Notes: generated by a model not told the origin, from the letters alone. DNA of 64,000 nucleotides from Phallusia mammillata (GCA_965637545.1 OZ281498.1:3410001-3474000), one strand, 5' to 3'. Shown: positions 15,601 to 63,819, counted from the stretch's first letter. Made by a program: numbers and translations.

Positions 15601-18600
15601 TTTTGTGAACAGAAATGAGACCTCCTGTTTAATTGCAAACTAAACACCAGTAATTTAACATTGTTCAATGCACTTGTTAATATAATGGGTATCTTTTGGA
15701 TTTTTTCGTGTACTTGGGTGGGGTATTGGCGTTTTGGTCATCCCAAATTTGCAAACACCTAAATATTGAAATACCACTAAACAATCTATACTTTTTTATG
15801 CTTTTATAAATACGTTAAACAATTCAGGATGTACTGCCAAATTTTACAAAAACTGTCATATGCAATATTTCAAAAAGAAACGAATTTAAAGCACTTTAGT
15901 TTGAAACCAAGGATTGAAAAAAAAACTTAGGTCAGCCTTTTCAGCATGTGAAGGCTTCATATTTTTTGGTTTTCAGCTGGAGGGCATTTTCAAAATCGAT
16001 GTAAACACGGAAACAGCAAACGAAACAGCGGTAAGATTGATCGACTCCGAAAAACTAACTGAGGGCAACAAAGAAATTTTTGTAGAGCAGCTGAATGGGA
16101 TTTGCAATAGGGTAGGTGCTATTATTGATTACGTTAACTTTGCGCAATATTTTCTGCACAAGACCAACTCCAGCAACATTAGTGCAGCGAAATGCACGAA
16201 CCTTGCTTGTGAATGTGATTAAAGGCCGATTACAGGGCCGTGTTAAAGCGGAGAACCTGTAAATTGGGGTTAAATGGTTTACAATGTTGATTGTTAGATT
16301 TCAAGCATTTACTTAATGGACATAGTAATCTATATTTGGAAACAAAATCAACTCACTCAAAAACTCCAGCTGTTTTGAAATCCGAGCCACTTTCTCTTTT
16401 GAAAATGTTGCCTCAACGTTAAAACAATAGTTCCTATTATATACAGCTATGTGTAGTCGACACCCAATCCCATACACTAATGTAAAGTCATTCCGAAAGG
16501 TCATCATTGATACACACTGGGTATATTGGCTCGCCGTTGTCACTGGGGTACAGCCTCCATTATACGTTTAACACACTTGTGCAGTAGGTTGAGTGACGAT
16601 AGCTGAAAGAAGGTTCTAATCACATAGTCAGCTATACTACTAGTTGTAGGGACAGCAACACGCTAATGGTGTCCACTGTGTAGCCTCGTAATGTTACCAG
16701 TCCTGTTTTAAAGGCCCTGATTTCTAGTTGAATGGAGGTGGTTAGTATGAAGTGTTGTGAATTTTCTCAGGTGCGCAAGGGTGAATTTGATGGAAAACCG
16801 CGGCTGACCATTGTCAAGTTGAACCGCATCGAGGAAAATCAAGTTGAAGTTGAATGTCAACTTACCACCTACAACTTGAAGACTGTTACGTTCAAGGTAT
16901 TCTGCTTTATATTACCATCTCTTGCTTGTTTGGAATAAATGTTTGGAAATTTTTTTCGCACTTGAATAAATGGCAGAAGTAACGTTCCAAAAAATCTAAA
17001 CAAAAGCTTCGATGCACATATCTAATTTTTGTTTTTGCTAAACTGCTACTTTAGCAGAAAAGTTTATATTTTTGACCCCTTTCGTGGAGCTAGGAATTAT
17101 GCTGCTTTTGTCTTGCAACCAGTGCAGCATGTTCGAAACATATGTCATCCAATTTTCAATTGCACAGTAAACTAGGAAGTAGATACCACAAAGACAGGGA
17201 ATGCATTGTTTTACTACTTATTTTCTGTCGCACAGACTAACATGTATTTCCTTGTTAAAGCCTTTTTAACCCCTACTATTTGTGTCTACAGTTTATTATA
17301 GACGAAGACACTCCCTCTGAGATTGCGGACAGCATGAACCAAGCGAACTATCTTAAGGAAAAGCACATGGAGGTTTTTAAAGAGGAAATCAGATTAGTCG
17401 TTATCAAAGCGAAGGAACTAATAGTTGCCGGTGTTGTCGACATCGACAAACTCAAGCAGGAAGTCTCCTCCTCCGAAACTCTTCTTCCCCTTAACGACTC
17501 CGCATCCACGACGTCTCTTCCCCAACCGGAGGGCGCCAAAGAGCAGGATAGCGCTGCAATTCCTGCTCGACTTGAGGAGATGGGAAGTGAAGTGGATTCA
17601 GTTCTTGGTTCTCCGCGTGTTAACCAAACTGGGGACATCACTGCCGAACAGCAGCTGGACTCAGCCATCAGTTCGCCAACCTCCAACTTAAATGGAAAAA
17701 ACGGTGACGAGGAAGTTACACACATCCCAAGTGACGTCAAACCCACCAGCAGCGCACAAAGTGCCACGGCAATCGCTACCAGCATCGCAGGTTACGCTCT
17801 CCATCGCTCGCCAAGTGGATCAAGCGTCGCCAGCATCGGCAGTGTCGGTAGCGCGGCGAGCTCGACAGCGGCGATGATGCCACAGAACAAGCAGGTGGTG
17901 TCAGGTGGCAGTGTCACTTCAATGGGAAGCACGAAGAGTCAGAATACATACGGCAAGGAAGCCGACACCATGGTGACTAATACGTTTAGCGGTCAGAAAC
18001 CAGCGAACCATGTTCAGGGTGCTCCTTACTCTGCTACACACCCGCCTGCAGGAGTCAGCACTCAGTTGTCACAACCGGTTTCACGAGACCCGTTGCTTCA
18101 CACAGAAAGTGTGGAGATTAGTGAAGATCAGGCCAAGGCCCCGTACAACCCGACCGATACTGTTACAAGTCTTGGTGATTTGGAGACTGGCAGCGAAAGT
18201 GGCGGTCATACCAGCAGCGCGGCATCAGACTTGTCAAAAGGTTTGCCTCAACCTGGAGAGCAAAATCCCGCTGAAAACCAGCCCGCGAACACATCTATGA
18301 CAACTCCTGTAGCCGTCCTTTCGATGGCCCAACCTGTGGTTTTGCCGCAAGCAAATGTTGCTCCCCATAAAGAAAAGCCGAAAGTAATGAACACGAACGA
18401 TTTGGATAAGCAGCTGACAAGGATATTGTCGCATGCTCAGACCGGTTTCTCGCCGACCGAAGTTGGAGTTGTGCCGATTTTGATTCCCGTGGCCGTTCCA
18501 ACAACCGGTGGTCAGCTGACTTCCGACAGCCAATCACCGTTTCCCATTCAAGACATTGACCCCTTGTCAGTCATTACCAAGCTCACCGGGTCGAAAAGTT

Positions 18601-21600
18601 TGAGCAATATGCCAAGCGATAATCCCGAAAATCAATCACAACCCCCTGTGTTGTCCCCGCCTCCTGCCAACCGCGCTACTTCAGAAAGCGAAGTCTTTAA
18701 TAACTCAGTGGTAAAGACCTCCACAGGTACAGCACGTGAAGGTGAATCCACTGAGACCGCCGATATACACACGAGCGCTGCAACAGCCGGTCACGACGTG
18801 GGAAGAATTTCGGACGCTGAGAGTTTGATCGAATCAGTTTCCTCGCAACACTCCGAGCAGACCAAGAAAGAATTACCCGCCGATGAAAGTCACCCAACTA
18901 GTGAGACTCAAGCTCAAGACACCAGCGAACCGTCTCGTTTTAGTCGTTTTCAAGTGACGAAAGTTTCTGACATAAATGCCAATGACGTCAGTGAATCTGT
19001 CGATGACGTAAGCGCTGGAAAACCGGCGGAAAATGCGCAAAGCCCTCCCTTACAGACCTTAGGCAGATTTCAAGTGTTGCCAACTGTTCTACAAACGGAC
19101 GACGAAGACTCACCAACGGACGCAGCATCAACAAGCAGCACTCACCGACAACACAGCTTTGATTCTGACAAACAATCGACGCCTGCGAAGATGCCACCAA
19201 ATTCACAAATCACCAGTGAAGATGCTAACTTTAAGGAAAGCTTCCTCGACACTTCCGAAATATCTGAAAACGCCTTCCCAACGACGACGTTACACCAGCA
19301 GCAACAGCAGCTACAACAACATCAACAACAACAACAATTGCAGCAGCAACAGCAGTATTACGACCGCAACGCATTACAGCCCATATACATTGCTCCCTAT
19401 CCGGAACAAAGTCTCCCGCCCGGCTCTGCCCAACACCAATACAATCAAACTGTGTACGGTTACCCATACTCAAACGGCCCAATGTACCACGATCAGCGAA
19501 TCGACAACCTGCCCTATGGTCAGTCCCTGCCCCTTCCCCTTCACTTTGCGCAGCAACCTCCCAGACAGATGCCGCCCAACGTGCTGCCCACCGGTGACAT
19601 CACGAACAAGGAGAGCCAGTCAGAGACAAGCCTCCTGATGCAAACGGGTGCAGCGCTACGCCAGCGGACGTACAGCAATAATAGTGAGAAGAGCATGTCA
19701 TCATTTGTGGGTGTGTGCCATTTTTTTCGCGAAAACCGCAACTCGGTTTTAAACCAAGAGCTCATTCACTTTACCACGCTTATGGAAGCACAGGTTTTAA
19801 CATGGTTTATCGTAATTTTCAGGTTCCGACCACGGACTTCCGCAAGACGTACCAACCGACTTGTCTTTACCCAAATCCGCTGTAAGTTTCATTAATCTTT
19901 TTTTAGTCGCGTAAACGAGGTTGCATTTTTTGAAGCAGAACATAATACGTGTAAAATAACATAGTCTTTTTGCACTTTTGCAATACTTTGAAACATCCAC
20001 ATGTTTTAATGGTGTGTTTATGACGTCACAGGCACGTGACGCGATGACGCGACATACGTCAACAAGCAGCAAACATTCAAGGTTCGGTGACGATCGGAGG
20101 TCGAAGCTTGTACTTGATTCTCCCACCCCTTCACAACACGGTGATCTGAGCGAAGACGAAACGGATGGAGACGGAATGGAAGAAGATGATATCGATTTCA
20201 AGGACCTGATGAAACGGTAAAATTGTGAATTATGTAATATTGGTTAAACCAACATGCTGGCTGGCAGTTGTAGATCTTTAAACAAATTTGATTCTGCGTT
20301 TTGTGTATAAGTAGGAGATTTTTATAAACATTTGATAGGCGGTAAGCTCAGTTTATCAAATTGTACGAATGACTAAACTAAATGAAAGATTTGCAAAGCG
20401 AAATTGTAAACCTTCCAATAACATTCATATTCTGCTTAATAAGCATGAGGCAGCAACTATTCTTAATTAAATCGCATCATGATGCTGTAATATGTGCATG
20501 TTGTGCAACATATTGTCAAACATGTTACAAAAATAAATTTGAATCTCCCAGCAACATAGCATATAGAAAACTCCGTTAACCTAAACAACCTTTTCCGCAG
20601 CCACCAACGGGAGATTGAGGCGTTGATCCGCAAACACAGACAGCAGCTGGATAAGTTGCGCAAGACCAAGAAACGGCAACGCGTCAAGCAGCAAGCGCAA
20701 AAACAACAACAACAACAATTGCAGCAGCAACAAGCCGCCGCGGCAGCTAACGCTTTTCAAGTTCCCGGGCCTAATAACGGTATGGCTCCCATCGAGCAAC
20801 AGCAGCTACCTTCCCAGTCAACAACGAACTTTGCAGAGAGTGGGAATGGTCGGGCAATGATGGAAGGCATGGTTAATGCTTCAACGTCCCACGTGAGTTT
20901 AATGACCCCGACTGATGCAGACGTTACGTGTTATTTGCAGACCGCGAGCGTCCTTCAGTGAGTGTAACAAACACGCCATAAGGAGCTCGGTTTGCAGACT
21001 ATTAATGCAGTACAGTTACTGAGAGCTCTGCACCAAACGCTCTCAAAAGATATATAGTTGATATATGCAAAAATTTAAACCATACCTATTTCAAACTAGT
21101 ACAAGTAAAAGCTTATGAAACTTTCAAATGACAGATGAAAACTTGCATTTAAATTTGTTATCGCGTGTAAAAATGTAAAACATTGCAAAAAATTCAACAC
21201 AGCTTCCTGTGTAAAATAGTCAGGCATTTTTTGACCGGTATAAAATTTTACACACTTGCTTGTTACTTTAAAATGATATTAATGACAATATCCGCTTACA
21301 TAAACCCGGAAATAATTAGAAATTTCACGAAGCTGAATCACCAACTATGTGCTGGTGCAGAGCACGCCGTACAGACACGCCCACCACTTCCGAATGCCAC
21401 GCCCCCTTTGCAACGTTGCCAACCAACTCGTGATTGGTGGCTAATTTTCAGTCATTACGTAAAACACGATACATTTCCATTAAACTCTATTTTTTTGCAA
21501 AATTTAATGTTTTCGACGGCGTCTTGTTAAGAATCATGTAACATAGTGGTTTCCAACCTGTTTTGACGAATTCCTCCCTTAACAACCCAAAACATTTTAA

Positions 21601-24600
21601 TTCCTTCATAATATACTACATAGTAGATGCTAAACCATATAATTGTATACAAAAACTATTTAAATTTGGATATTTTATCAACTTCACAGGTCGTATTCCC
21701 AGGAGTATTTGTTTACAAACCATATAAAAAACGCAACGTAAATTCCTTCCCTCAAGTTTCAAAAATTCCTCCCGGTTGGGAACCACTGGTGTAACAAACT
21801 GAAATATCAGCGTATATAAATGCTAACATTCCTTATACTGACGGAATTATTTAGTTTTTAACCATTGTTTAGCCAGTAGTTTGACCAATTTAACATATCA
21901 AATCTCTTCTACTTCAGGCAACAGGATCAGTTCCGTCGTCGGAGAAAAACGTTTATTCTCACCATGTTTCGAAACAGGACTCAGTTGAAATGTTGTCATC
22001 ACGAATTAACAGCCAAGTTGCTGAAAACTCGTCAGGTTGGTGACACAGAATTCTAAAAATATTATGTTACATATCAAAATCAATTCACATGGCAAAGCAA
22101 AGTGCTATTGTGATTTATCGCTTTCAACAAATTGTTCTTTGTTAATTTTCTTTTGACAAGCATAACAAACCTAAAGAAGTGTCCAGGAAAATCAATGCCA
22201 CCTCACATTAAGTTATGCACATACCAATAACATATCTAACTTTCGTACCCGGCTAACAACGGCACTTGTATGTATGTATGCTACCAATGCTTCGTAATAC
22301 CACGCTAATAATCATGCTGTCGTTTTTTATTCTTTTCGCTTACTACTTCAGACTTTTAGAACAAAGGTAAACCAAGTTCTGTGATCATGTGACGTTTGTG
22401 TGGGTAAATCATGGCCTGAACGACCTGAATGTTGTCAATAACTTTTGTTCGTGCGCCACCTCCTGTATTCCTGTGTGTGGTGAGCTATTTTTAGACTGTG
22501 CGAAAATGCAGCACAATTTGCATTTAAGAAGCAATTTCCGACAAAATACTTAAAAAACACTTCCCTACCCCAAAGGATTTTGAAGCAACACGTCTCACTT
22601 GGTTACAAGAATGTGGCCCAGAAAAAATGAAATTCAAAGTACCTTAAAAACGCATTTTGATTTTTTGGCATATTTTTTAGCATTTGATACTAAACATTTA
22701 TTTATCCCTAGCTGTGGAAAAGGCACTGTAGTTTAAAAGAATTTTCGGTTGTACACAACTGTTACTCCAAATTGGCTTTTCAGAGTTAAATTAATTCAAG
22801 CATTTATCAAGTAATTGTGTTGTGTTTAATACAAAATGCATGGCATTGTTGTTAACAACACAATGCGCCTGCGTTTCGTCGTAGTTGTTTGTTATACCTG
22901 CACGATCCCCGTCTCGGTAAGACTCCTAACTTTGTCGCTTGCCAAAGATCGCCCCAAATCGCGAACATCCGACCTGACCCTGGAAGCTTACAGCCGAAGT
23001 ATCTCAATGCCAGATGAAATACAAGGCCGCTTTAGGGCTGCAAAATCTTGCGACAGTCGGCCTCCGATCAAAGTGATAAACTCTTCCCCTCCTTCGCACA
23101 ACCCACCGCCTCCTCGCTTCCAAATCGGCGGAGACAACGAGCTCCCAATCCCTCCTCCTCCCAGTCCTCGACGTTGGAGCGAAGTCTCGCTTCATCCCAT
23201 GCAGCATCCAGTCAACATGAGCGATAAATCTTACTTACTCTCCAACGAGTCGTCAGTTCGCCGCTGGAGCGATGTTTCGTCAGTGTTCAAGACCAACCGC
23301 GGGGTTTGGCGAAACCAAAACGCTGGCAACTTTAGAGACGCAACTCCGCTTGATGATTGGGACATCCGTTTTCACCGCACGATGGCACCCGAGGACAGCA
23401 ACGGTGAAGACTGGTGACGTGGCGACGCTTACTTTTGCTGTGGCACGTGCTGAGTCATTGCAAGTCTTGAACAAAATGCATGCGGAATATCTATGGAATG
23501 CGTCTCTTAGTTGTCTGTAGTGAAGCAATCAGTCGAGTGCAATTAATTCCATATTACGCGTGTTATGCGGTGCCATTTAAACGCGCTTTTTTTTGCAGAA
23601 GCATATGCTTGGCCTTGCCTATTGCAATCGCCTGCTTATAATAATCTAACCCACAGCGTAATCATTTTCCGACAGGTGGCGATCTTGTTCCGCGTTTTCG
23701 CCAGCGAAGGCCGGCGTCGCTGAGGCTTCGGCGGCAATCGGCCGTTCCTGCCCCACCAAGCTTTTCAAGCTCGGGCCCTTCCTTGGAGCAGGGCCCACGC
23801 ACTGCAGGCTTCAACGACGTGTCTTCGGTGTTTGAGGCGTCGTTTCGAAGTGAGAACATTGGGGCGTATCTCGAGTCGATTCAAGGTGTCCGCCGCACGT
23901 AGTTGAGCTTGTTTGCCCGAAAAATACATAACATAACACGGCCAGCAAGTTTGGCGGCCTTTAATTATTCATGGAGTGCTTCGTAGAGACGTTTCATGGA
24001 GATGTTTTGCAAGTGGCCGTTTTGTCGCTTGTCAGGGGCCCCGCTTAGCCGATATTCTGTCACATGCAAAATGCCTGTTTGATGACGGGTGCATCTGGCA
24101 GTTGATCGGCTTATGACGTAATATCTCAGTGATTTTACTTTTGTGCTGAACAATTCTTCACCCAACAATTTGCCAACGATTAGCTGCATGTCAATTTGTG
24201 AACGAAACCCTAGGTTAATTGTTCACTTCGCGTATTACATAGCACTACCTTCGTGGCAATTTCGGCAATTCGACATCTCAATGCAACGCTTAGGCTTTAG
24301 TTACGGTGATAGAATAGCGTCAGGTGGTGGTGAACTTCTTTAGTTCAGTCTGTACTACTTTCTTTATCCTTTACCGGACGCTTGTTGTCTTTTCTTCTTT
24401 TTATCACCTGATCTATTTTGCTTCTCCGCAGAACACGTCGTGTTTCGGTGAACTCGACTTCACCACTTTATTTTCTTCAGCGGACGAGGTACCTCTTAGC
24501 AATGCAAACATCCCAGTGTGTTACCACTTTAACCCATTCAAACCTGGCATTGCTTTACCGTAACATGGATCGCATCGCAATAGCTACAAATGTCCATCTT

Positions 24601-26302
24601 TCCTTTCAGTCCTTGCTTATCACGGTCGTGCATCTGCGACATCTAACCAATGTCCATCTCTCATCTATTCCCTTCAACCTTCCATGTTTTCAATTATGAC
24701 TACTCATTGATACGAACCTACGTGTCATGTCCCATGTAACTTATTTGAACAAATTTTTGGTTCCATTTTATAGAAGCCGTTCTGAGTGAATTTTAAGGGC
24801 CTTCCGTTTTAACACTGCAGTATTTTCATATCTGAACTTCAACCCAAACTTTGCTATGCGCTTGACTTGACCATCGAACAAATTGCAAGCTACTTTTAAA
24901 TACAGCCCGAAATTTGCCAAGCAAACCTTCTTGGGATCATATCTAAAGCTTTGGCTCCTTTTGAAAAAAAACACGCATTTTTTTGCTGTATACTAACCCT
25001 TGCGAATTTAAGATGCGTGCATGTGCAGTTTGGTAAAACTTTGTCAGTCGTCGCACCAGGACCGAACTACGATGGGAGTTTCGGCCGTCTCCATGCACTT
25101 TGCACCCCGCATCATTTCTGTGTAATGTATTTTTGCATGAATATGTTCGCGCCCATTTGTCATCGCATGTTTAGACCGAAAATGTGACTTTGCCATACAG
25201 GTGAAGTCCGCCGTGCATGTGCAACTACAATCTCCACACATAGTTTAATTTATCACCATGCCATATTTCACTGTAGTTTTAGCTCTGTTTAAAGGATGGA
25301 GTTATGTGTAATCATACATATTGCGCTTTAATCTCAACAATAATGTATTTTTTCGCAGATAACAACAACAAACCTACAGCAGACCCGTCCGGTTCCGTGT
25401 ATAGCATGTTACCCTCTGCTTACCCCGCCAACCCGCAGCCCGCTGTGCCGGGATTCATGGATGTAAATTCGGGCAACGCAGCGTCTGTTCCCCAGGGCCT
25501 CTACCGCTACCCGCAACCGAGCGCCTTCTACAACCCTCGCGAAATTATGGCGAGAAACAATGCGCGAAATGTCCCTGCTCATAATAACACTGCAGCCTGG
25601 AGCAGGTCGTATCAGCCGGTACTTGTGCAGCAGCAAGGACAACAACAGCCCACTGCGCACGATTATTCGGTCTCTGCTGCCAATGAGGCTGACCGTGGCC
25701 AATATCAGAATCGCCCTGCTGAGCAAAGTGAAGTAAATTCACAACAGCAACAGCAACAGCAACAACAACAACAACAGCAGAGGAATGACAGCGGTTACGA
25801 AACGTCACGGACAAACACAACCTCCGGCTCACGTGATTCGCAGCAGAGTGACGTCGGTGCCTCACGTCGTCGTTCGACAGGGGGTGGCGATATGCCTTCA
25901 CACACCTACCACCAGCCGTACATGATGCCTGTCACTTACATGCCTTATAACGGACCTGGCGGTTTCGCACACACTCCAGTTGTAGTGCCGCCGCAGTGGG
26001 CAAACCACTTCATGCGTCAACCGCTCGCTATGTATCCACCAGTGGACGTTTCCGCACTCGCAGCCCACCAACAAGTTCCACAACAACAGCAGCAGCAGCA
26101 ACAGCGGAACCAAAACGCCCCGCCCAACCTCCCTTACGAACAGCGAGCCCCGATGCAGATGTACAACGACGCTGGGAAGAATCACAATGACTTTGCATTA
26201 ACAACTCCTCTTCGGGTGAATCGCGTCGCAAAAGATCTGCAGGAGGAGTGGGAGACGATGAGCAACGCGTCAGATCGATCGATGCATCGTCCAGCGATCT
26301 AA
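668..26302 (+). CDS. WNK: WNK (With-No-Lysine[K]) serine/threonine kinase, ~2340-2560 aa depending on cassette exons
   Basis: Kinase motifs [13 protein letters not shown] (catalytic Lys in subdomain I), AWCELQ (Cys at the usual Lys position), [34 protein letters not shown]. Also an autoinhibitory/CCTL1 domain, CCTL2 (VECQL..TVTFKF), two RFQV motifs and a C-terminal HQ coiled coil ([10 protein letters not shown]). Phase-consistent exons: 668-1346, 1562-1881, 2018-2193, 2261-2481, 2546-2703, 2891-2979, 3049-3313, 12466-12777, 13145-13219, 13967-14048, 14188-14360, 14647-14829, 15977-16111, 16771-16896, 17292-19710, 19823-19881, 20032-20216, 20601-20892, 21918-22035, (22948-23403), (23676-23885), 25359-26302. 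Kinase exons are certain; start codon and 3' exons are less so. Confidence 0.95.
5550..5828. repeat. Tandem duplication, 138-bp unit x2, in WNK intron 7
   Basis: CACAAGACTATAATCTAAAATTTTCGG...CATGGCGC starts at 5550 and again at 5688; only two transitions distinguish the copies. Confidence 0.9.
9141..10323. mobile_element. Non-autonomous hAT (Buster/Charlie-type) element, 1183 bp, containing a second internal left end at 9826
   Basis: Perfect 16-bp TIR CAGGGGTGGGCAAACT; perfect 8-bp TSD TTTTAAAG (9133-9140, 10324-10331); GCGGCCC subterminal repeats; internal CAGGGGTGCACAACC. Confidence 0.9.
12592..12660 (+). repeat. (CAA/CAG)n polyglutamine tract in WNK exon 8
   Basis: Encodes [23 protein letters not shown], mostly pure CAA. 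Confidence 0.9.
13145..13219 (+). CDS. WNK: Small symmetric (phase 0-0) WNK exon, [25 protein letters not shown]; possibly alternative
   Basis: 75 nt open frame, TGTGCAG acceptor with GACTAAC branch-like motif upstream, CAG|GTAGAC donor. Confidence 0.6.
14049..14187 (+). other. WNK: Non-canonical GC-AG intron in WNK
   Basis: Exon 13967-14048 runs into a TGA unless spliced at AAG|GCAAGT. This donor gives the phase 1 needed by the TTTTGCAG|AT acceptor at 14187/14188. Confidence 0.7.
19296..19355 (+). repeat. CAG/CAA polyQ tract in the large WNK exon
   Basis: Encodes [20 protein letters not shown]. Confidence 0.85.
21544..21788. mobile_element. hAT MITE (Buster-type), 245 bp, in a WNK intron
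   Basis: TIR TAGTGGTTTCCAACC / CAGTGGTTCCCAACC (13/15); TSD ATGTAACA / GTGTAACA (7/8). Confidence 0.8.
22948..23403 (+). CDS. WNK: WNK C-terminal cassette exon A (phase 1-1, 456 nt); alternatively terminal, with stop at 23415-23417
   Basis: CTAAC branch-like motif and CCAAAG acceptor; open frame DRPKSR...PEDSN; ACG|GTGAAG donor in phase 1; encodes RSISMP, RFQI and RRWS twice. Confidence 0.6.
23676..23885 (+). CDS. WNK: WNK C-terminal cassette exon B (phase 1-1, 210 nt); alternatively terminal, with stop at 23900-23902
   Basis: TTTTCCGACAG acceptor; open frame [25 protein letters not shown]...[10 protein letters not shown]...ESIQ; CAAG|GTGTCC donor. Not in the supplied ORF track because it has no start codon. 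Confidence 0.55.
25742..25780 (+). repeat. CAA/CAG polyQ tract (13 Q) in the last WNK exon
   Basis: Read directly; further Q runs near 20700 and 26080. Confidence 0.85.
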
Positions 26303-27073
26303 CCACGCCCAGGTCGTCCAATATGTTCCCTTTATGTTACCGTATAGCGTTCCCACATGCTGCTCGTATTGTTGCTGCGCCGGCGATTGTCCACTGAAAC
26401 AAGTTAACGTGGTATCACGTTTAGTGCGTGTCAGAAGGGGATCTGTTCACCGATTTTAGTCGCTATATGAATTTGTTGACAATAATAAACTAACGCTTGC
26501 AGACGTGCTTTTGTTACCCCACCAATCAACTCACAAAACAAAATGCAAACAAGAACGTTTGTGTTTTGTGAAATCGCCATATGAAACTGTGCTACTATTG
26601 TGTCGCTATGTTATACATAAGTCGGAAAGCCGCTTCGCTGTCCACCATTCCGATTCAGTTCAGTTGTATTTCGCCATACTTTGCAGCGGAGTGGGCTTTC
26701 CAATGACGCGATTTTGATGAAATTGACGTCATCCACCAACTCATTGATCGATATTCGATTCCGAGGCATCACAGGTGCCCGATGGATTGCGTTGAGCCAC
26801 TTGTACCGCAACATGCCCGCTATATACACGCTTCCTATTTATTCCAATGCACTTGACGGCTTTCAGGCCAAGTGCATTTTACACACACACCTCTCACGCC
26901 GTCATTTTGTCATGACGTGGTCTCTAGTTTTAAGGTGGCTTGCTTCTGAATGTGGCGTCGGTGGTTTTCCCTTCTTTTTGTTTTAGTTTCTTTTTCTCTT
27001 TTTCCCGGTTGTTTTTCGACCAGTTTCCTGGATAAACAAAAGTATTACGTTCGTTGTTTACTGTTCACAATAT

Positions 27074-27079: not shown

Positions 27080-29872
27080 GTTTACAGAGGTTGCGAATCT
27101 GCACCTGCATCAGAAATCCACAAAGGGCCTATCCCGGTTTACGACAAGAAAAATGCCTTGATGACAATTGCGACATAAAAAAAATGTACCAAAACGAATA
27201 CTTTACTTAAATTCAAATTCAGTGGTAAAAACGAGTTTTTTCAATACTGTCTTTTTTTGTAGGTTTAGTAGACTATAAAAAACAAATTTGTAACTTAGAT
27301 ATGCTGTTTTAGTTCAACTTGTTAGCAATTAACTAAAAGCAGGGGATGATTACCCATGACTAATGCACTATTGAAAAGTGTAGCCCGTGATTGTGGTAAA
27401 GTAAGCCCTGTAACAACGATCTCAGTGTTTAAAATTTGAAAACTGTTATTTCAAAGGAATTCTAGAAAAACGCGTTATTTTCGGCAAAATTGTCAATGAT
27501 TGTAGAACTTAAAAATTTTGCTTTGTAAGAAGTGACAGAGATACAGTAGATTATGATAAAAGACAGTCAATATTAATCTTTATAATCTTGCGAAAAAACT
27601 GTGACGCATATGTGTTTTATAAATGAGAACAGAAAAAAAATCCAGTGAAGTGTAGGTGACATTGTTTGAATAATCGGTTGTCAATTTTAATCTCAATTTA
27701 GATCAAAATTATTGTTACACAGCCGAGTCCAGGTCGGTTGCTAGTCTGTTCTTACTACTTGAACCAAACGTTCCGAATTTTAAACTTTATGATTCAAAAA
27801 TATGTAACCGTCGTTAAAAGTGTTTTGGTCTACGTAATCGCGACGATGACAAACGCTTGAGCACTTAAGATCTCACGGCACAAATTCAACGCATTGAAAA
27901 CCACATTTTCGACCCAAGTGCAGAAGCGCGCCTTTTTCTTACGACTTGATGCCATCACTTGAATTGAGCGTGGTCGGTGAGTTACTACATTTGCGTTTCT
28001 GTCAGCGTTCTTTGAATGACATTGGCTTAGTTTTGTGGCATTGGAAGCATGTATACGGTCCAACAGTGGCTTAGTAGGTTTGTAATGAGGAAATAGGCAT
28101 ATAACAAGGATTAGGAGCAATTTTGACCGGAGATAAAATTAAAAAGTTAAAGCGATTTGCCAGTGGTTTCCAAACGAGATCAAAAAGGTGTCGTAAGAGC
28201 TTATCTGTGTTCGTAAAATGTATTACAACAAAAAAAAGATAATGAGGTTATTGCCTAAATTTTAAGTAAGTAAAGGCTTGCTCCCAAAACGTGATGTCTT
28301 CTAATCATTTAACAAACTCGTAAGTTTAGAGCACAATGTTTACTTAGATGATGGTTATAAAATCTGGTACATCTGCGAATCTATTTTAAAATTATTTGTT
28401 GTCTGTTTTTAGTGAGCATGACCTAACCTCAATTGTTTGAAATTTTCCAACTAAACCATCATTCGTTTTATCTGATAGCAACAATTTTGGTCGCAGTGTC
28501 GTAAAAAAGTATTGAGAAGTGCGCACAATACTGTCATAAATTATTTGAAATAAAGCCGTTTTCGAGTGTAGATTCAGATAGTAGGCTATACTTTGCGATG
28601 TTATGCAGCAAAACAGGCCAAGAAAATTACCCCATTGTAGCACACGTTTACCATCAACTAACATGTCTCGTGGTCAAGTTTACGCCCAAACGTTCCTATT
28701 TGACGGGAGAGACTGGGTGCAGTTTGTAGCTATATCTTCTATTCGTCCCAAGGGATTGCCCAAGTTCACAAAGGTGCAGTATATTTATCAAGCGGCCGTT
28801 ATACAAAATACATGGATACCAGGTGCCACACAAAACCATGCAGTCGCGCTCGTGACCTATGCAAGGCTTGACAAGTAATTACGACGCCTCATAATAACAA
28901 CACGGGCGGCAATCTGACATCTCAGCATCAAATTTCAGAGGCCTATGGGCAATAGTTTGGCACGGCTTGCAAGATCGATCTTTTGTTTACGCCTCAATAA
29001 ATGCTGGTGAGAAATTGGTCCTGAACGAATGCAAAAAAATCGTTTGCCACTGGCTACGCGATGGAGTACGTCTCATTGGTCGCAGGTGATATATCGGTCA
29101 GAGCGAATGCGCTAACACGTAGTTGTATGCTTTATGTTTAAGATCCATTTGAATCCCTCGACTTAATGGCTTCTATCATCAGCGAAATCTCGCAACGTGT
29201 AAAAAATATACTCCACAGGTTGATCGATTTTCCACGCGTAATGCGATTTTCCGGGGATTTTCGTGGACATTTAAGGCGGCAACTTGAGGACCACAAACCA
29301 CTTGGGTTGTCTTAAGGTCGCACTGACGTATTCTTGTTCGTTCTAACTTGGTAATGAAACCCAGACCAGGACAATGACTTTGGGATCGTTGTGTTGTTTC
29401 AATACAGACAATTCCGTCACGTTTTTCCAACTCCAACCTTCGTGTTTGTAAATTAGTCGTTCAGTGTGTTGGTTGAAGCCGAAATGAGCAGTTTAACTTT
29501 TTTCTGTGCTGTCCTGGGATCTATTGCTAAGGTTGACATCTCCTGCTAATTGAGATATTTGTCAACTAAAAACGAAGCGTTCAGTGGCAGCATTTATCAA
29601 GTGGAAATAATAAAATCAATATCAATTGTTTGCACTCCAGCGGCATTCCTGTCTTTAATTGTCCACAGATTGAAGCACTTTTATGTCCTAGTTTAGCGGC
29701 TGTAAATATCTTTGCATAAAACTTATTTGATTTTAAAATTTTCTTTCAGTTTGTAAAGGAGTATTTCGTGAAATGAGTTCATAGCCAGCGTGAAGGTGAT
29801 CTGGCCGATATAATCGGTCAAACAAGCTTGTTTATTCTGCAGCAGAGGCGAGAGTGCAGGTGTGTTGCCAAG

Positions 29873-33581
<3,709 letters not shown>

Positions 33582-37888: not shown

Positions 37889-38617
37889 ATGTCTCTGGCT
37901 TTAACATGCAAAAGATTAATGTTCAAGACTCCAAACTTTCTTTCATGCACTAGTAGCAGGCTTTTGCATAAAACAGCTGTTGTTCACAAAGATGATGTCG
38001 ATCGTGAACCAGCTCAAGTCATGCAACCAGTACGTACAGAAATTGGCAGCCTTCGTAACGCACCCAACAAAGCTGAGTACATTGCAACTCGAATCGATGA
38101 CCTGATTAACTATGTAAAAACCAATTCACTTTGGCCCATGACATTTGGCTTGGCATGCTGTGCAGTGGAAATGATGCACTTTGCTGCCCCACGATATGAC
38201 ATGGATCGCTTTGGTGTGGTGTTTAGAGCAAGCCCCAGACAAGCTGATCTAATGATAGTGGCCGGAACACTGACTAACAAGATGGCACCAGCTTTAAGAA
38301 GAGTGTATGACCAAATGCCAGACCCAAAGTGGGTTTTATCAATGGGAAGTTGTGCAAATGGTGGTGGTTATTATCACTATTCATATGCAGTTGTCCGTGG
38401 ATGTGATCGGGTGGTACCTGTTGATATTTATGTACCAGGATGCCCTCCTACAGCTGAGGCGTTATTGTATGGAATCTTGCAACTGCAAAAGAAGATACGC
38501 CGTTCAAGGATGCAATCCTTTTGGTACAGGGAGCATTCACCAAAGATTGACAGATGGAGTGAGGTTTACAAGAAAACTACATCAGTTTCTGAATCAAAAC
38601 AGCTCGAATCACATTAA
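37889..38617 (+). CDS. NDUFS7: NADH:ubiquinone oxidoreductase core subunit S7 (PSST), single coding exon, 242 aa
   Basis: Motifs [57 protein letters not shown]; basic presequence-like N-terminus; upstream acceptor TTTTTTACAG at 37827; AATAAA at 38676. Confidence 0.97.
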
Positions 38618-39509: not shown

Positions 39510-40534
39510 TCAACCAAAACAACACGATGTTCCAACTGATTTTGTGTTATTACTTATATTAAATCCTTGATCATCCTTTGAATCAGCTAAATCTTTGACA
39601 TTACTTTGTTGCTTTAACAGTTCTGTTGCCATTTTGATGAAGGCATCATTTACATTTGTGTTTTCCTTGGCTGATGTTTCCAAATACTCCAGAACTTCAA
39701 ATGACTTGCCTTGAGCTGATGCAACTTCATGGCTGACCTTCCTTCTGTCAATCATGTCACATTTGTTTCCTAAATACACAACACAAAACCCAATTTCCAT
39801 CAGCCTTATTTAGGTAAATTTGTGGTTAATAAAAGTTGCAGGTTTATAAAGGTTTGTCTTGACAGAACAAAAATACACATACCAACAAGCAGTTTCACCA
39901 CGTTTGTTGAGCAAAATCGGGAAACATCATCCATCCATTCCACTGTACTGTCAAATGTGCTTTCTTTCGTTAAATCAAAAGTGCATATGACGCCATGTGC
40001 ACTTCGGTAGTATGCTTGAGTAATGGTTCGAAAGCGTTCTTGTCCAGCAGTATCCCATACCTAGAAAACATGAATAGGCAGATTCAATAACCTGTTAGAC
40101 ATACAAAACAAAAAAAGGCAAATTTTATTTCTTAAATGAAAAACATGAAGCATTGTTGCAATTTTTGCACAGCATAATGTATAACATACAAATTATTATA
40201 TTAGTGTTACAGATTAACTTTGGTATTGAGAAAATTTCAAAATAACTTTGTAAAATTCAAAATAATTGATTCATGTTCACAAAAATCTAAACATTTGAGA
40301 AGTGGTTACTTTAAAATGTGTGTAATGTACTGTGTCAGGCCCACAAAAACGTACCTGCAATTTAATTTGTTTTCCATTAATTTCGCAAGTTTTAAGACAA
40401 AAGTCCACGCCAATGGTGCTTGCTTGTGACTCAAACCAGGAACCAGTCTTGAACCGTTGGACGATACAGGTTTTTCCTACACCCGCGTCTCCAATCAGTA
40501 TAATCTTAAACAGATAGTCACATTTGTCTTCCAT
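39510..40534 (-). CDS. RAB43: Rab GTPase, Rab43/Rab19 subfamily, 205 aa
   Basis: Exons 40534-40355, 40060-39883, 39769-39510; motifs [39 protein letters not shown] and C-terminal CCFG prenylation site. Assignment to Rab43 versus Rab19/Rab30 is from recalled similarity. Confidence 0.85.
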
Positions 40535-40864
40535 GGTGCCTATGCGCTTAATACAACAGATATGAACAGGTAAACATATATATTGAGTACTATTTATCAC
40601 GTGGCAGCGTACAACATGGAAGTGGGCACGTAATCTGAAACGACGAGTCTCCCAACTTCCAACCATCGCAATCAAACTGTCGTGTGGACTGCCTGCTGGT
40701 TACTAAAGGAAAAAAATACACGTCAACCGGGAAGTGTTGTCAAAATTTTCGAAAACATTTGTAATGGCTAGTTTTCATATCGTTTGCTTTGGTTAAAATT
40801 GTATTTAGGAACATTTCGCCGAAACCACAAACAACTTCAGGTGTGTCGACTTTTCCTCAAATTT

Positions 40865-58681: not shown

Positions 58682-61600
58682 CTATTGCAACTGGGGAATA
58701 GGGAAACTTTGCTGAGCAAGACTTTCAATTGCTATTTCGTCAGTTCCACGCCGAATTCGCACAAACCCATTTTCACCCCAAGCTTCTCCCCAGCTGTTCT
58801 TTACGATCCAGTATTTTTCACCAGTCTTTTGGTCTGCTCCGTATCCCACCACCAGTACGGCGTGATTGGTCAGTTCAAACGGGTTGAAGCCCTCTGTGAC
58901 CGATGATTGGTCGACACTGGTCACGTGGTGGTAGATACCAGATTTGTATTGCTGGAAGTCGGGGTAAACCTGAGAGCAAAATGTGACATTAAATCAAAAA
59001 AAACTTTAAGGGAAGAGTTTACTTTAGTTTTTACATGTGGTATGCAAATAGACACGACCTGTGAAGTTGATAAAAGACCCAATGTTAAATGATATTTCTA
59101 TGTGGTTTAGCAAAACTATGTAAGAAGGAACGAAAATGCTTTGAATTGTTAATGGAGGAAATCGTCGAGAAAGCACTGCTTTGAATTGAACTGTTTATAT
59201 CTTGTTTTGGTTAAACGCGACGAAAAGAATACGCCTTGTGCTAAGGCAGTGGTCTTCAACCTTTTTTAAAGGCGACCCCAATTTAAAAGAAAATTAAATC
59301 AACATTTACATGCGACCCCATTTTTTCCGATAGGGAGAAAAATGTTTGTAGTAATGCAGAAACTGAAACTATTTTTATGTAAATATGACCGCTCAATTTT
59401 CCAGTATACTTTAACTATTTGCATTCAGCGTGCGTTATTACGCTCAAATGTTAGAGCCCAAACGTTTTATTTAATTTGACCAGTCTAATTCGCTTTATAA
59501 AGCTCATCAGTTTGCAGAAATCAGTAAATTCATGTATATTTCCCTGTACCCGCTGTATTATTTTGGACACAATATGTCATTAATGGGGCTCTATGGCGTA
59601 ACAATGGGTTAGATGACTTGTGTTTCATAATGGATTACTGCATTACAATGATTAGATTGTGACCTGAGCTACCAAGTTATACTGCAGAACATGAGCAAAG
59701 GTTGCGAACTAGAACAAAAACGTATCATTTTTTGGTAATAAATTTAAACGCTGATAAATTGAATTGATAGCGACCCCAGAAAAAGTTTAGGCGACCCCAC
59801 TTGGGGTCGCGACCCACAGGTTGAAGACCACTGTGCTAAGGCATGCCCGACATTGGGGCCTGTACTCAATATACCCAAGAAAATGGTAAATTAAGCAAAA
59901 CAACATTTCGGTCAGTTAGAAATAAGGAAGCTCATTGTGCAACTTGGGCAGGAAATAGTGAAGGAAAACAAAAATACGTTTTGATATCACGTTTTTAAAT
60001 CGGCACTCTTCCGAGCAATTTAGGCTCAGATTAAATATTAACAGCCAGGGAAACAAATCGCTTTTATTTATGGCATAACAATCGCCTTGTTGTAAGCCTG
60101 ACAACTTGGTTTTGGACGTATTTTTTTCATAAAAATCGTGTCTAACATACAGCAGTTGGTAACTTTTCACACGACACAAATCTAGATTACGCGTTTTACG
60201 ATGTTGATAGTTCCGTTGCGTGCCATGTTGCCAATATCACGTGACTGTCACGAGACTGTACCTAACAGTACCAGTACATATCACATGACACAGCCAGCAA
60301 CCTATTGTTCTCCAACAAAACACATACAGAATAATAGTCACATGTGGTCACCATAAAACAATCAAGTGGGTAGGAAACAATTCCCTTTAGCCTACTGGCC
60401 TTTTATAATACATTTAAATGGTTTACCTCAATTGCAACAGCCATTGGTCCATAAGCCACTAGGTCTTCCATCATTTTGGCTTCTGAACAGGCTCCATAAT
60501 AACCACCAACGTACTCATACTTCTCAACATAATGCCTCTTGCAGTTTTTAATGGCCATAGAGCAGGTTGGTGTGTCCTTGCCCTCATAAGGATAGCAATG
60601 CTCCTCAACAACACCAAAGTCCTGAGCATATTTGCCAGCAATAAGGTAGGGAAAGCCACCTTCACAGCCTGATATACATAACAGTTTTGTTAGAGTTATG
60701 AAAAAAGCAAAATATAAATGACTTGTAAACATACCTTGTGCATATTGACTGCAAGAAACAACTTCCTGAGGTGAAAACACAGGTGTCTGTGTGTTGTTGG
60801 TCATAATACGAACTCTGGCTTCCAGCATACCCATAGAGGCAAAAGCATAACAACTGCCACATTGTCCCTGCAAGTTTTCAAGATCATTTGACAAGGCTAT
60901 ATATATCTTGCAGACTTGAATTACAGTTAACACAAACCATAAGAACATGACAACAATATTTTAGATTTCATTGCAACCCCAGATCAGCTGCAAAGTTGAC
61001 ACAATGTAAAGATACACATATTCCTTTTTTTGCACTAAACAACAAACCTGATTGCGAACTGGTGACACAAAGTCTTGATTATTTACTTTTCTCCAATCAA
61101 AAGACTCAGGCAGCTTAGCCTTGATGTATGCCTGCTTTGCTGCATCCAATTCTTTCACATGGGTGGGTCTATAAAAATGCATTGACAATTTGTAGTATAT
61201 TTGTAGATTACCTCATTTTGCAACTAAATAATGTTACCTTACTATTCTTCCATTTCCATACCCTGATCTTCTTAGTACTTGCTCGTAAGTCATTGTGGAC
61301 AATTCAGGATAGCTTGCTGCTTTCCATGAATTTTGGGCTTGATTTAGTTTCTCAATAAATTTTAAATCATTTTTATATGGAAGCTGAAGCACCTTTTCAA
61401 CCCTGCGCATAAGTTGCAATGATGAATTAATATGTGTACTATATTGCCTTTGTATGTCAGTTTTTGTATTATATTTTGCCCCTTGTTACCTCAACATCTC
61501 AGGATGTAATTAGGTCTTTAAACAATTACATCCAATACTTTGAACAATTACATCAAATACCATAAAACATCTTTGCAGAGATATAACATGAAAATGTCAT

Positions 61601-62994: not shown

Positions 62995-63819
62995 TTAAAT
63001 GTTTGTTCCCCTTCCAAGCAATGTGCGCTTCCACCCTTCGGTGTCAACTTCTGGGCCTGTGCCATTATATGCTGCAGGAAGTTTGGCTGGATCAACAACT
63101 TCATGCAGTTTCTCATAACTGTTTCCAATCACCCTTAACCTCTTTCTAGTCTTTTCTTTCATGAAGGGCTGAACTATCTTAAAGAGGACATCAAATACAG
63201 TTGGTTCATTCACAAGACTCACACACTTGACACGGACAGGCAAGCAATCCTGAAGCAAGTTTAGAAATCGTTTGGCTGAGGCTGGGCCCATCTGTTTTGC
63301 TAAATCTAGGTCCATGTAAGATAGATCTTCAATGACAGTCAAGCCATGAATTTGCATTTCTTCATTTTCTAGCATTTTTTCCACAGTCAAAAATAAGCCA
63401 GCTACAAAGTCTGTAAATATCATGTCTTTTTGTTTACCAGGCCTCCCCATAAACAATGAAGTTCCATCTTTCCCTCCAGAAGGCATGCCAAAAACACATC
63501 CAGCATCAAGGAGAGGTGTCAGAAGTGTTGGATTGTTGACCTTTTCAAAAACTTCTGACCAACTGTTTCTTTGTTTGTGGTAGTTCAACAGCATAGCAAG
63601 GGCTCGATCATGATCGAACTTCCTTGCCCGCAGAAACCGCAAAATGAAAGCATCATCAGAACAGTGCAACTGATAGCCTTTTTGGTTTTTCGAAAAGCTT
63701 TCTCTCAGTTTGTCAATAGCTGCAAGTCGTTCTGTATTGTCCTCTGGTTCATTTAACTCTTCCATAGCTTTGGCTAATAAAGGTGCACTCAGTGTGCATT
63801 CATAGCGCTTAACAGACAT
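62995..63819 (-). CDS. CRAL-TRIO/Sec14-like lipid-binding protein (alpha-tocopherol transfer protein/CRALBP/clavesin-like), intronless CDS, 274 aa
   Basis: CRAL-TRIO_N motif DAFILRFLRARKFD; Sec14 domain EEMQIHGLTVIEDL, LQDCLPVRVK, PFMKEKTRKRL, LPAAYNG; splice acceptor ~18 nt upstream of the ATG. Confidence 0.9.
   Translation of the reverse strand: MSVKRYECTLSAPLLAKAMEELNEPEDNTERLAAIDKLRESFSKNQKGYQLHCSDDAFILRFLRARKFDHDRALAMLLNYHKQRNSWSEVFEKVNNPTLLTPLLDAGCVFGMPSGGKDGTSLFMGRPGKQKDMIFTDFVAGLFLTVEKMLENEEMQIHGLTVIEDLSYMDLDLAKQMGPASAKRFLNLLQDCLPVRVKCVSLVNEPTVFDVLFKIVQPFMKEKTRKRLRVIGNSYEKLHEVVDPAKLPAAYNGTGPEVDTEGWKRTLLGRGTNI

What the first reader, a model, noticed from the sequence alone, without database searches (positions are those of the whole stretch)
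22036..25358. Block of swappable phase-1 cassette exons that would rewire the WNK tail with docking and phospho-motifs
Seen: between exon 21918-22035 (ends phase 1) and the last exon (starts phase 1) lie two symmetric open exons. Exon A (22948-23403) encodes RSISMP (a perfect mode-I 14-3-3 motif), RFQI (23115-23126, a third RFx[V/I] CCT-docking motif) and RRWS twice (PKA-type). Exon B (23676-23885) encodes RRPAS, RRQS and repeats A's DVSSVF hexapeptide. Each can also read through its donor to a nearby stop, acting as an alternative last exon that removes the Q/N/P/Y-rich tail. Established: WNK1 activation involves condensate formation through its disordered C-terminus, and SPAK/OSR1 dock on RFxV/I. 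Inference: splicing here may switch condensate propensity, cAMP/14-3-3 input and SPAK docking together.
Basis: partly seen in the sequence, partly recalled or inferred. Interest (0 to 1): 0.7.

Follow-up and report, generated by a model that had tools for sequence, protein, structure and literature searches.

The report
Optional exons in WNK kinase tail
Two frame-preserving optional exons sit in front of the last exon of an invertebrate WNK kinase gene: the first is shown in RNA to be included or skipped, the second is conserved in a distant relative but was not caught spliced, and what they share across species is a cluster of RRxS kinase-target motifs, an ordinary kind of isoform variation already known for mammalian WNK1.

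Summary
All coordinates, AG/GT borders, phases, motifs and read-through stops are as described.

**Exon A (22948-23403).** It is a real alternative cassette. RNA-derived contigs carry joints 22035>22948 (two studies), 23403>25359 (two studies) and the skipping joint 22035>25359 (all four runs).

**Exon B (23676-23885).** No joint was seen in the four runs. Its frame, phase and both splice borders are kept at homologous positions in the only relative found. That relative's constitutive tail exons are 32-34% identical, against 47-48% for B. Third codon positions are near saturation while residues are kept, so B is a coding exon under selection.

**Interpretation: partly supported.**
- The RRxS-type motifs (two RRWS, RRPxS, RRxS) are conserved column for column. 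The 820-residue big exon has none.
- RFQI and RSISMP are not conserved at their aligned positions.
- No poly(A) signal follows A or B. The read-through RNA looks like intron retention.
- Including a cassette does not remove the Q/N/P/Y-rich tail, so the condensate switch is unsupported.

**Most likely function (inferred).** An optional, disordered phospho-regulatory insert, analogous to the C-terminal RRXS cluster of vertebrate WNK4.

This is a new member of a known kind.

The parts
21918..22035 (+). Constitutive exon before the block (118 nt, phase 0 in, phase 1 out)
   Evidence: Joint 20892>21918 in all four runs. Joints leave from 22035 to 22948 and to 25359. Frame read.
22036..22947 (+). 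Intron between the constitutive exon and exon A; retained in run X1
   Evidence: X1 contig 22006-23403 runs unbroken from the upstream exon through this intron and exon A. Reading through gives a stop after 6 codons.
22948..23403 (+). Exon A: alternative cassette, 456 nt, 152 codons, phase 1 to 1
   Evidence: Joints 22035>22948 (X5, X17) and 23403>25359 (X5, X1), with skipping joint 22035>25359 in all four runs. The relative matches at 40% over 77 aa, E 3e-5, with a similar donor cg|gtgaa in the same phase.
22995..23012 (+). RSISMP (RSxSxP pattern)
   Evidence: Present. Not conserved at the aligned column; the relative has RDRSSP about 17 residues further along its exon.
23115..23126 (+). RFQI (RFx[VI] pattern)
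   Evidence: Present. The relative's exon A has no RFx[VI].
23169..23180 (+). RRWS no. 1, inside the conserved block SPRRWSE[VI]S
   Evidence: Invariant columns S72-S77 in alignment A1.
23259..23270 (+). RRWS no. 2, inside the conserved block RRWSD.S.FK
   Evidence: Invariant columns R104-D108 in alignment A1.
23404..23675 (+). Intron between A and B
   Evidence: No similarity to the relative. Covered only by the unspliced contig of X1.
23676..23885 (+). Exon B: conserved candidate cassette, 210 nt, 70 codons, phase 1 to 1
   Evidence: The relative matches at 47% over 68 aa, E 8e-12. Its copy is 204 nt, with cag|GT and AAG|gtgtc borders at homologous positions. Differences by codon position are 16/14/29 over 43 codons. 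No joint is listed; X17 contig 23676-23927 starts at the exon's first base.
23705..23740 (+). RRPAS and RRQS, inside the conserved block PR[FY]RQRRP[AS]SL[RK]LRR[QH]S
   Evidence: Alignment A2 invariant columns R10 R11 P12 S14 L15 L17 R18 R19 S21. This stretch is one of only three that blastn detects between the two species in 6.8 kb.
23886..25358 (+). Intron before the last exon
   Evidence: No conserved block, no poly(A) signal, and only low-level or X1 contig coverage.
25359..26302 (+). Last coding exon (Q/N/P/Y-rich tail), phase-1 acceptor, stop at 26300-26302
   Evidence: Joints into 25359 from 22035 and from 23403. The relative matches at 34% over 317 aa, with acceptor ttccacag|AT in the same phase. 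AATAAA at 26484 and 27074.

Best explanation
The interval holds two optional, frame-preserving coding exons of a WNK kinase gene, placed between the exon ending at 22035 and the last exon.

**Exon A (shown).** It is an alternative cassette. Some samples splice 22035 directly to 25359, and others splice 22035>22948 and 23403>25359. Inclusion adds 152 residues.

**Exon B (shown to be conserved; its use is inferred).** It is a protein-coding exon under purifying selection with conserved splice borders. Its use was not caught in the four runs laid. It is probably included in a restricted tissue, stage or condition, and would add 70 residues.

**Structure.** Both inserts are predicted to be largely disordered.

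**What selection keeps.** It keeps four basophilic serine motifs: SPRRWSE[VI]S and RRWSD in A, and RRP[AS]S and LRR[QH]S in B. No such motif exists in the 820-residue central tail exon of either species.

**Mechanism (inferred).** The cassettes are an optional phospho-regulatory module. Including them gives WNK extra target sites for an RRxS-directed kinase (PKA, SGK or PKC type), possibly with phospho-dependent partner binding. This is analogous to the C-terminal RRXS cluster whose phosphorylation activates vertebrate WNK4. The constitutive SPAK/OSR1-docking RFQ[VI] motifs and the Q/N/P/Y-rich last exon stay in every fully spliced isoform.
For: **The gene is a WNK.** Pkinase, OSR1_C and CCTL2_WNK hits. 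The hallmark [11 protein letters not shown]...VAWCEL is visible in the ORF at 1552-1911.

**Cassette A.** GT..AG joints lie exactly at the predicted borders, in runs of different studies, together with the skipping joint in all four runs. Word shares differ between runs of one study: P2 gives 0.39 and 0.36 against 0.21 and 0.20. That fits sample-dependent inclusion.

**Conservation**
- One relative was found through the big exon (P0001, 32% identity). Its contig carries A, B and the last exon in the same order.
- Identity is about 40% for A's conserved half, 47-48% for B, and 34% for the last exon.
- B's borders and phase are identical in position. The relative's last-exon acceptor is also phase 1.
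- The codon-position pattern is 16/14/29 differences, and 19 of 24 identical residues are encoded by different codons. The flanking intron is 27-30% identical.

**Motifs.** The RRx[ST] motifs sit at homologous columns in both species, and the big exon of either species has none.

**Disorder.** pLDDT 54 with pTM 0.14 for A, and 61 with 0.18 for B.

**Precedent.** RRXS phosphorylation activates WNK4 (PMC8819348, PMC9496095). Mammalian WNK1 has eight alternative exons, including 26, 26a and 26b near the 3' end (PMC3365125).
Against: - No joint into or out of exon B appears in the four runs. B's open frame alone is not statistically unusual.
- Only one relative species was available. Whether it is an ortholog or a paralog could not be settled.
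- The codon-usage score of A and B in the proposed frame is the best of the three frames but weak: 0.00 and 0.12, against 0.35 for confirmed exons.
- No homolog of A was found in two large protein searches. The exons are therefore lineage-restricted or unannotated, and homology to the vertebrate RRXS cluster is untested.
- The +1 residue after RRWS is acidic, which is not the preferred PKA context (own knowledge).
- All RNA evidence is from assembled contigs, not raw reads. No phosphorylation data exist.
Confidence: 0.7

Rival explanations
1. Splicing of A and B jointly switches condensate propensity, cAMP/14-3-3 input and SPAK docking, and each exon also acts as an alternative last exon that removes the Q/N/P/Y-rich tail.
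For: - The motifs exist in the window and read-through gives nearby stops.
- Contigs do run across A's donor (X1, 23374-24666) and B's donor (X17, 23676-23927).
- WNK1 condensates are established (PMC13686953).
Against: - RFQI and RSISMP are not conserved at their aligned positions, while the constitutive RFQ[VI] motifs are.
- There is no poly(A) signal in 23404-25358.
- The short read-through tails are not conserved in the relative, which has about 45 and 19 further codons.
- The read-through coverage is part of a coverage of the whole interval.
- Spliced inclusion keeps the tail.
Confidence: 0.08
2. Exon B is no longer used in this species. It would be an ancestral exon whose sequence has not yet decayed, or one transcribed only as part of retained intron.
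For: No B joint was found in four runs from four studies, while A's joints were found. The A-containing contigs of X5 and X1 splice from 23403 straight to 25359, skipping B.
Against: - The frame is open, both splice sites are intact, and G+C is the highest of the region at 0.60.
- B is the best-conserved piece of the tail, with third positions saturated. At this divergence that needs ongoing selection in at least one lineage, and most simply in both.
- An X17 contig starts at B's first base.
- Contigs drop rare forms.
Confidence: 0.15
3. The main regulatory event is retention of the 22036-25358 interval, as a detained intron or unproductive splicing. That would end the reading frame 6 codons after 22035 and lower the output of full-length tail. 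The cassettes would be secondary.
For: - In X1 the whole interval is covered by contigs at about a quarter of the exon figure, and the contig is continuous from inside the upstream exon.
- The preceding intron 20893-21917 is not covered, apart from a repeat.
- Runs X1-X4 of study P1 hold 0.72-0.82 of the words of the stretch.
Against: - It is seen strongly in only one study. Contig depth is a poor measure, and it could be nuclear pre-mRNA or a splicing intermediate.
- It does not explain the protein-level conservation of A and B.
Confidence: 0.12
4. Inclusion of A is splicing noise at a chance open frame and has no function.
For: A has a weak acceptor (gcttgccaaag|). There are two non-synonymous variants within the species (23160, 23320). 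No database homolog was found.
Against: - The joints appear in independent studies at depths comparable to the skipping form in X5.
- The frame, the phase, the donor and two RRWS blocks are conserved in a relative with about 33% tail identity.
- The open frame has P of about 0.005.
Confidence: 0.03

Closest known systems
Alternatively spliced exons of mammalian WNK1 (8b, HSN2, 9, 11, 12, 26, 26a, 26b; PMC3365125; Roy et al. [quoted passage not shown]
   Same: - Frame-preserving cassette exons in the disordered part of a WNK kinase downstream of the kinase domain.
- They are used in a sample-dependent way.
- One group (26, 26a, 26b) lies just before the 3'-terminal exons, as A and B do here.
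- The cassettes carry short linear motifs.
   Different: - No sequence similarity to anything was detected, so homology of the exons themselves is not shown.
- The conserved content here is RRxS motifs, not proline-rich motifs.
- The tissues are unknown because the samples are coded.
C-terminal RRXS cluster of vertebrate WNK4 (mouse S1169, S1180, S1196; SGK1/PKA/PKC; PMC9496095, PMC8819348)
   Same: Several RRxS serines are clustered in the C-terminal non-catalytic tail of a WNK kinase. In WNK4 their phosphorylation promotes kinase activation.
   Different: - In WNK4 the sites are in the regular protein. Here they lie on optional exons.
- No phosphorylation evidence exists here.
RFx[V/I] docking motifs for the SPAK/OSR1 CCT domain
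   Same: The window's WNK has two RFQV motifs in its big exon, conserved in the relative as RFQV and RFQI. Exon A has a third match, RFQI.
   Different: The exon-A match is absent from the relative's exon A. It fails the conservation test that the two constitutive motifs pass.

Membership tests
WNK protein kinase gene (context of the finding) | Protein kinase domain with the catalytic lysine moved to the glycine-rich loop (GxGSFKTV) and Cys in place of the usual beta-3 lysine (VAWCEL) | tested here: met
   Pkinase hit, E 3.4e-16. The ORF at 1552-1911 reads [11 protein letters not shown]...VAVAWCELQ.
WNK protein kinase gene (context of the finding) | CCT-like (PF2) domains after the kinase domain, and RFx[VI] motifs in the tail | tested here: met
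   OSR1_C at 44 bits, above the 22.4 cut-off. CCTL2_WNK at 23.5 and 26.3 bits, just under the 27 cut-off. Two RFQV motifs in the big exon.
Alternative cassette exon: exon A | RNA joints at both borders plus a joint that skips the exon | tested here: met
   Joints 22035>22948 (X5, X17), 23403>25359 (X5, X1) and 22035>25359 (all four runs), all GT..AG.
Alternative cassette exon: exon A | Length a multiple of three, with the same phase at both ends and an open frame | tested here: met
   456 nt, phase 1 to 1, open.
Alternative cassette exon: exon B | RNA joints at both borders | tested here: not met
   No joint at 23676 or 23885 is listed in the four runs. The only hint is an X17 contig that begins at 23676. 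The evidence is contigs only, 26 records were not shown, and only one call was allowed, so absence is not shown.
Alternative cassette exon: exon B | Frame-preserving, with the splice sites and coding frame conserved in another species | tested here: met
   210 nt here against 204 nt in the relative, with AG and GT at homologous positions and phase 1. Identity is 47-48%, and third positions take 29 of the 59 differences.
RFx[V/I] CCT-docking motif (RFQI in exon A) | Pattern match in a disordered region | tested here: met
   RFQI at 23115-23126. Exon A is predicted to be disordered.
RFx[V/I] CCT-docking motif (RFQI in exon A) | Conservation of the motif in relatives, as for functional WNK motifs | tested here: not met
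   The relative's exon A has no RFx[VI], while both big-exon motifs are conserved.
RFx[V/I] CCT-docking motif (RFQI in exon A) | Binding to the SPAK/OSR1 CCT domain | not testable with these tools
   Needs a peptide-binding assay.
Mode-I 14-3-3 site (RSxpSxP; RSISMP in exon A) | Pattern match and conservation | tested here: inconclusive
   The window has an exact match. The aligned column in the relative reads AINHP, but the relative has RDRSSP (RxxSxP) further along the exon.
Mode-I 14-3-3 site (RSxpSxP; RSISMP in exon A) | Phosphorylation of the serine and 14-3-3 binding | not testable with these tools
   Needs phosphoproteomics or a pull-down.
RRxS basophilic-kinase sites, as in the WNK4 RRXS cluster | RRx[ST] pattern conserved at homologous positions | tested here: met
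   Two RRWS motifs in A and LRR[QH]S in B are invariant, and RRP[AS]S in B is conserved. Neither species has any in the big exon. P is about 0.011 for three such motifs given the composition.
RRxS basophilic-kinase sites, as in the WNK4 RRXS cluster | Sequence homology to the vertebrate WNK4/WNK1 C-terminal sites | not tested
RRxS basophilic-kinase sites, as in the WNK4 RRXS cluster | Phosphorylation by PKA, SGK or PKC, with an effect on kinase activity | not testable with these tools
   Needs an experiment.
Alternative last exon (intronic polyadenylation) | A poly(A) signal and RNA 3' ends downstream of the read-through stop | tested here: not met
   No AATAAA or ATTAAA in 23404-25358, while the true 3' UTR has two. 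Contigs cannot show RNA ends.

The most novel reading that the evidence does not exclude
The A/B pair is an old, selectable input module. Splicing would decide whether this WNK carries a cluster of RRxS sites, and so whether it responds to cAMP/PKA- or SGK-type signalling. The constitutive C-terminal RRXS cluster of vertebrate WNK4 would be the fixed descendant, or a convergent equivalent, of such a cassette. A weak acceptor and retention of the flanking introns, as seen in one study, would add a second layer of control.
Probability: 0.15. Interest if true: 0.55.

Novelty: new member of a known kind. Interest (0 to 1): 0.35.

Why it matters
WNK kinases control ion transport and cell volume. 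Their long disordered tails are where hormones and partner proteins act, and in mammals isoform choice by alternative exons is known to change that wiring. This result shows the same design in an invertebrate WNK. The optional exons are kept over a divergence at which the rest of the tail is about 33% identical, and what is kept in them is a set of RRxS motifs. That gives a compact, testable hypothesis: an optional kinase-input module. It also corrects the gene model, because exon A was in no protein found by two large searches. It does not open a new kind of mechanism.

Tried and rejected
1. **Protein homologs of exon A.** The word-index search found 19 candidates and none scored. The exhaustive HMMER search of 1.84 billion representatives gave 0 hits at E up to 0.001. 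Pfam found nothing for A or B, and the ESM Atlas gave no usable hit.

2. **More relatives.** A third word search, restricted to the RFxV region of the big exon, found nothing. Only one relative species, present in five metagenome assemblies, could be used.

3. **Walking downstream in the relative through its called genes.** This failed because those prokaryote-style gene calls contain in-frame stops. It was solved instead by an exact 42-nt DNA pattern scan.

4. **A Logan contig whose product equals exon B plus its read-through tail.** None is on record.

5. **Exon A or B as a duplicate of something else in the window.** None was found. A against B gives only a weak 45-residue alignment around DVSSVF. 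The two DVSSVF copies differ at five of six third codon positions, so they are not a recent DNA duplication.

6. **Other hidden exons in 22036-25358.** No other stretch scores as coding or is conserved.

7. **The RNA depth at 21585-21781 as a further exon.** Rejected. It is a short element with inverted ends, that is, a repeat.

8. **dN/dS.** Not computed, because synonymous sites are saturated at this divergence. Codon-position counts were used instead.

Full report
**Context**

The window carries a WNK kinase gene on the + strand. Pfam finds the kinase domain, the OSR1_C/CCT-like domain and two near-threshold CCTL2_WNK matches. The ORF at 1552-1911 shows the WNK hallmark [11 protein letters not shown]...VAWCEL. 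An 820-residue central exon (about 17301-19760) holds two RFQV motifs. The gene ends in a Q/N/P/Y-rich exon at 25359-26302. I did not test the taxon.

**Observation**

- Exon 21918-22035 is 118 nt and ends in phase 1 at CAG|GTTGGT.
- Exon A, 22948-23403, is 456 nt, lies between aaag| and |gtgaag, and is open in the phase-1 frame.
- Exon B, 23676-23885, is 210 nt, lies between gacag| and |gtgtcc, and is open.
- The last exon begins at 25359, also in phase 1.
- Any combination of the exons therefore keeps the frame.
- Reading through either donor meets a stop within 4-5 codons.

Against chance:
- A's 585-nt open frame occurs in 0.5% of shuffles of the interval. B's 255-nt frame is unremarkable.
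- Both exons stand out by G+C: 0.54 and 0.60, against 0.36-0.44 in the introns.
- The proposed frame is the best of three by codon usage, but only weakly.

**RNA**

One search for runs and one lay of contigs were allowed.
- The runs are coded and recorded only as 'RNA?'. The GT..AG joints show that they derive from spliced RNA.
- Joint 20892>21918 is present in all four runs laid, each from a different study.
- The skipping joint 22035>25359 is also present in all four.
- Joint 22035>22948 is present in X5 and X17.
- Joint 23403>25359 is present in X5 and X1.
- In X5 a single 513-nt contig holds 30 nt of the upstream exon, all of A, and 26 nt of the last exon.
- X7 has only the skipping form.
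- Across the run list, word shares cluster at 0.20-0.21 (constitutive exons only) or at 0.36-0.44. Both classes occur within study P2. That fits sample-dependent inclusion, but this is an inference from shares.

Exon A is therefore a real alternative cassette.

No joint at either border of B is listed. The A-containing forms seen skip B. The only hint for B is an X17 contig, 23676-23927, that starts at B's first base. In a de Bruijn assembly that is what a branch at that base produces. The contig has low depth and runs through B's donor.

**Conservation**

- Exon A has no detectable homolog in two very large protein collections.
- The big exon found one relative, P0001, at 32% identity, on 60-65-kb contigs in metagenome assemblies.
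- I extended that contig downstream with an exact DNA pattern.
- The relative carries the coiled-coil exon, an A-like frame, a B-like frame and the last exon, in that order.
- A matches at 40% over 77 residues (E 3e-5). B matches at 47% over 68 of 69 residues (E 8e-12). The last exon matches at 34% over 317 residues.
- B's copy is 204 nt. Its acceptor (cag|GT) and donor (AAG|gtgtc) are at the homologous positions and in the same phase.
- A's donor (cg|gtgaa) is likewise kept in phase. A's acceptor in the relative is ambiguous: phase-1 candidates lie at 19866, 19911 and 19932, and the first has the best pyrimidine tract.
- The relative's last exon also opens in phase 1 with AT.
- Over B's first 43 codons the differences fall 16/14/29 by codon position. 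Of the 24 identical residues, 19 use different codons. The introns on either side are 27-30% identical, which is random.
- B's 5' end is one of only three stretches that blastn detects in 6.8 kb.
- The constitutive exon 21918-22035 is not detectably conserved.

B is therefore a coding exon under purifying selection, and A is too in its central and C-terminal part. Caveats: there is only one relative, and I could not establish whether it is an ortholog or a paralog.

**Motifs**

The conserved cores are SPRRWSE[VI]S and RRWSD.S.FK in A, and D.VPR[FY]RQRRP[AS]SL[RK]LRR[QH]S in B.
- All RRx[ST] motifs of the cassettes sit at invariant columns. The 820- and 856-residue big exons of the two species contain none.
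- RFQI is not conserved, and the relative's A has no RFx[VI]. Both constitutive RFQ[VI] motifs are conserved.
- RSISMP aligns to AINHP. The relative has an RxxSxP (RDRSSP) elsewhere in the exon, so that point is inconclusive.
- DVSSVF is shared by A and B in this species only (P about 0.002). It is encoded by different codons, so it is not a recent duplication.
- AlphaFold models from the two-sequence alignments are low-confidence and nearly free of structure, apart from a helix at B residues 49-68. That fits carriers of linear motifs.

**Alternative last exons and condensates**

- There is no AATAAA or ATTAAA between 23404 and 25358. The real 3' UTR has two.
- The short read-through tails are not conserved.
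- Read-through RNA does exist. In X1 it is part of a coverage of the whole interval 22006-25327, at roughly a quarter of the exon figure.
- That coverage includes a contig that runs from inside exon 21918-22035 through the intron and A. This is intron retention or a splicing intermediate, not a defined terminal exon.
- The preceding intron shows no such coverage, except over a short inverted-repeat element.
- Spliced inclusion of A or B leaves the Q/N/P/Y-rich exon in place. The proposed switch of condensate propensity therefore has no support from the anatomy.

**Explanation**

- Shown: a cassette block with A used alternatively, and both exons conserved in frame, phase and motif core.
- Inferred: the cassettes are an optional, disordered phospho-regulatory insert that supplies RRxS sites.
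- The nearest functional precedent is the C-terminal RRXS cluster of WNK4. Its phosphorylation by SGK1, PKA or PKC promotes activation (PMC9496095, PMC8819348).
- The nearest structural precedent is the set of alternative exons of mammalian WNK1, including 26, 26a and 26b near the 3' end (PMC3365125), and the spliced proline-rich cassettes named in the title of Roy et al. 2015 (paper not held).
- Homology to either precedent was not tested.

**Verdict**

This is a new member of a known kind, of moderate to low interest.

Noticed in passing
window 22006-25327 (run X1, study P1): The whole interval between exon 21918-22035 and the last exon is covered by contigs at about a quarter of the exon figure. 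In this run exon A is seen only with its upstream intron retained, which puts a stop 6 codons after 22035, yet it is spliced from 23403 to 25359. The preceding intron is not retained. It could be a splicing intermediate, a detained intron or an unproductive isoform.
   Followed up: partly
window 21545-21790: A short element with inverted ends (GTGGTTTCCAACC... / ...GGTTGGGAACCAC) lies in intron 20893-21917. RNA contigs with loose ends pile up here in three runs, as expected of a dispersed MITE-like repeat rather than an exon.
   Followed up: partly
window 23160 and 23320: Two non-synonymous variants in exon A appear in RNA contigs: C>T (Pro to Ser; X5, X17) and A>G (Asn to Ser; X5, X1). Both lie outside the conserved RRWS blocks.
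   Followed up: no
L001-L006 (relative's contigs): The relative's WNK locus sits on 60-65-kb contigs in five metagenome assemblies, so it is host DNA in metagenomes. The gene calls stored for them contain in-frame stops under table 11, so they are prokaryote-style calls on eukaryotic DNA and cannot be used as proteins.
   Followed up: partly
window 23825-23884 (exon B residues 49-68): The only predicted secondary structure in either cassette is a helix at the C-terminal end of exon B (pLDDT about 56-70). It is partly conserved (F52, A54, S55, R57, S58, N60, A63, E66).
   Followed up: no
window 29828-32906, 37889-38617, 39510-40675, 60403-60948, 62995-63819: Neighbouring genes: a carboxylesterase-family gene (+), an apparently intronless NADH-ubiquinone oxidoreductase 20-kDa subunit ORF (+), a Ras-family small GTPase (-), a papain-family protease (-) and a CRAL-TRIO protein (-).
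   Followed up: partly
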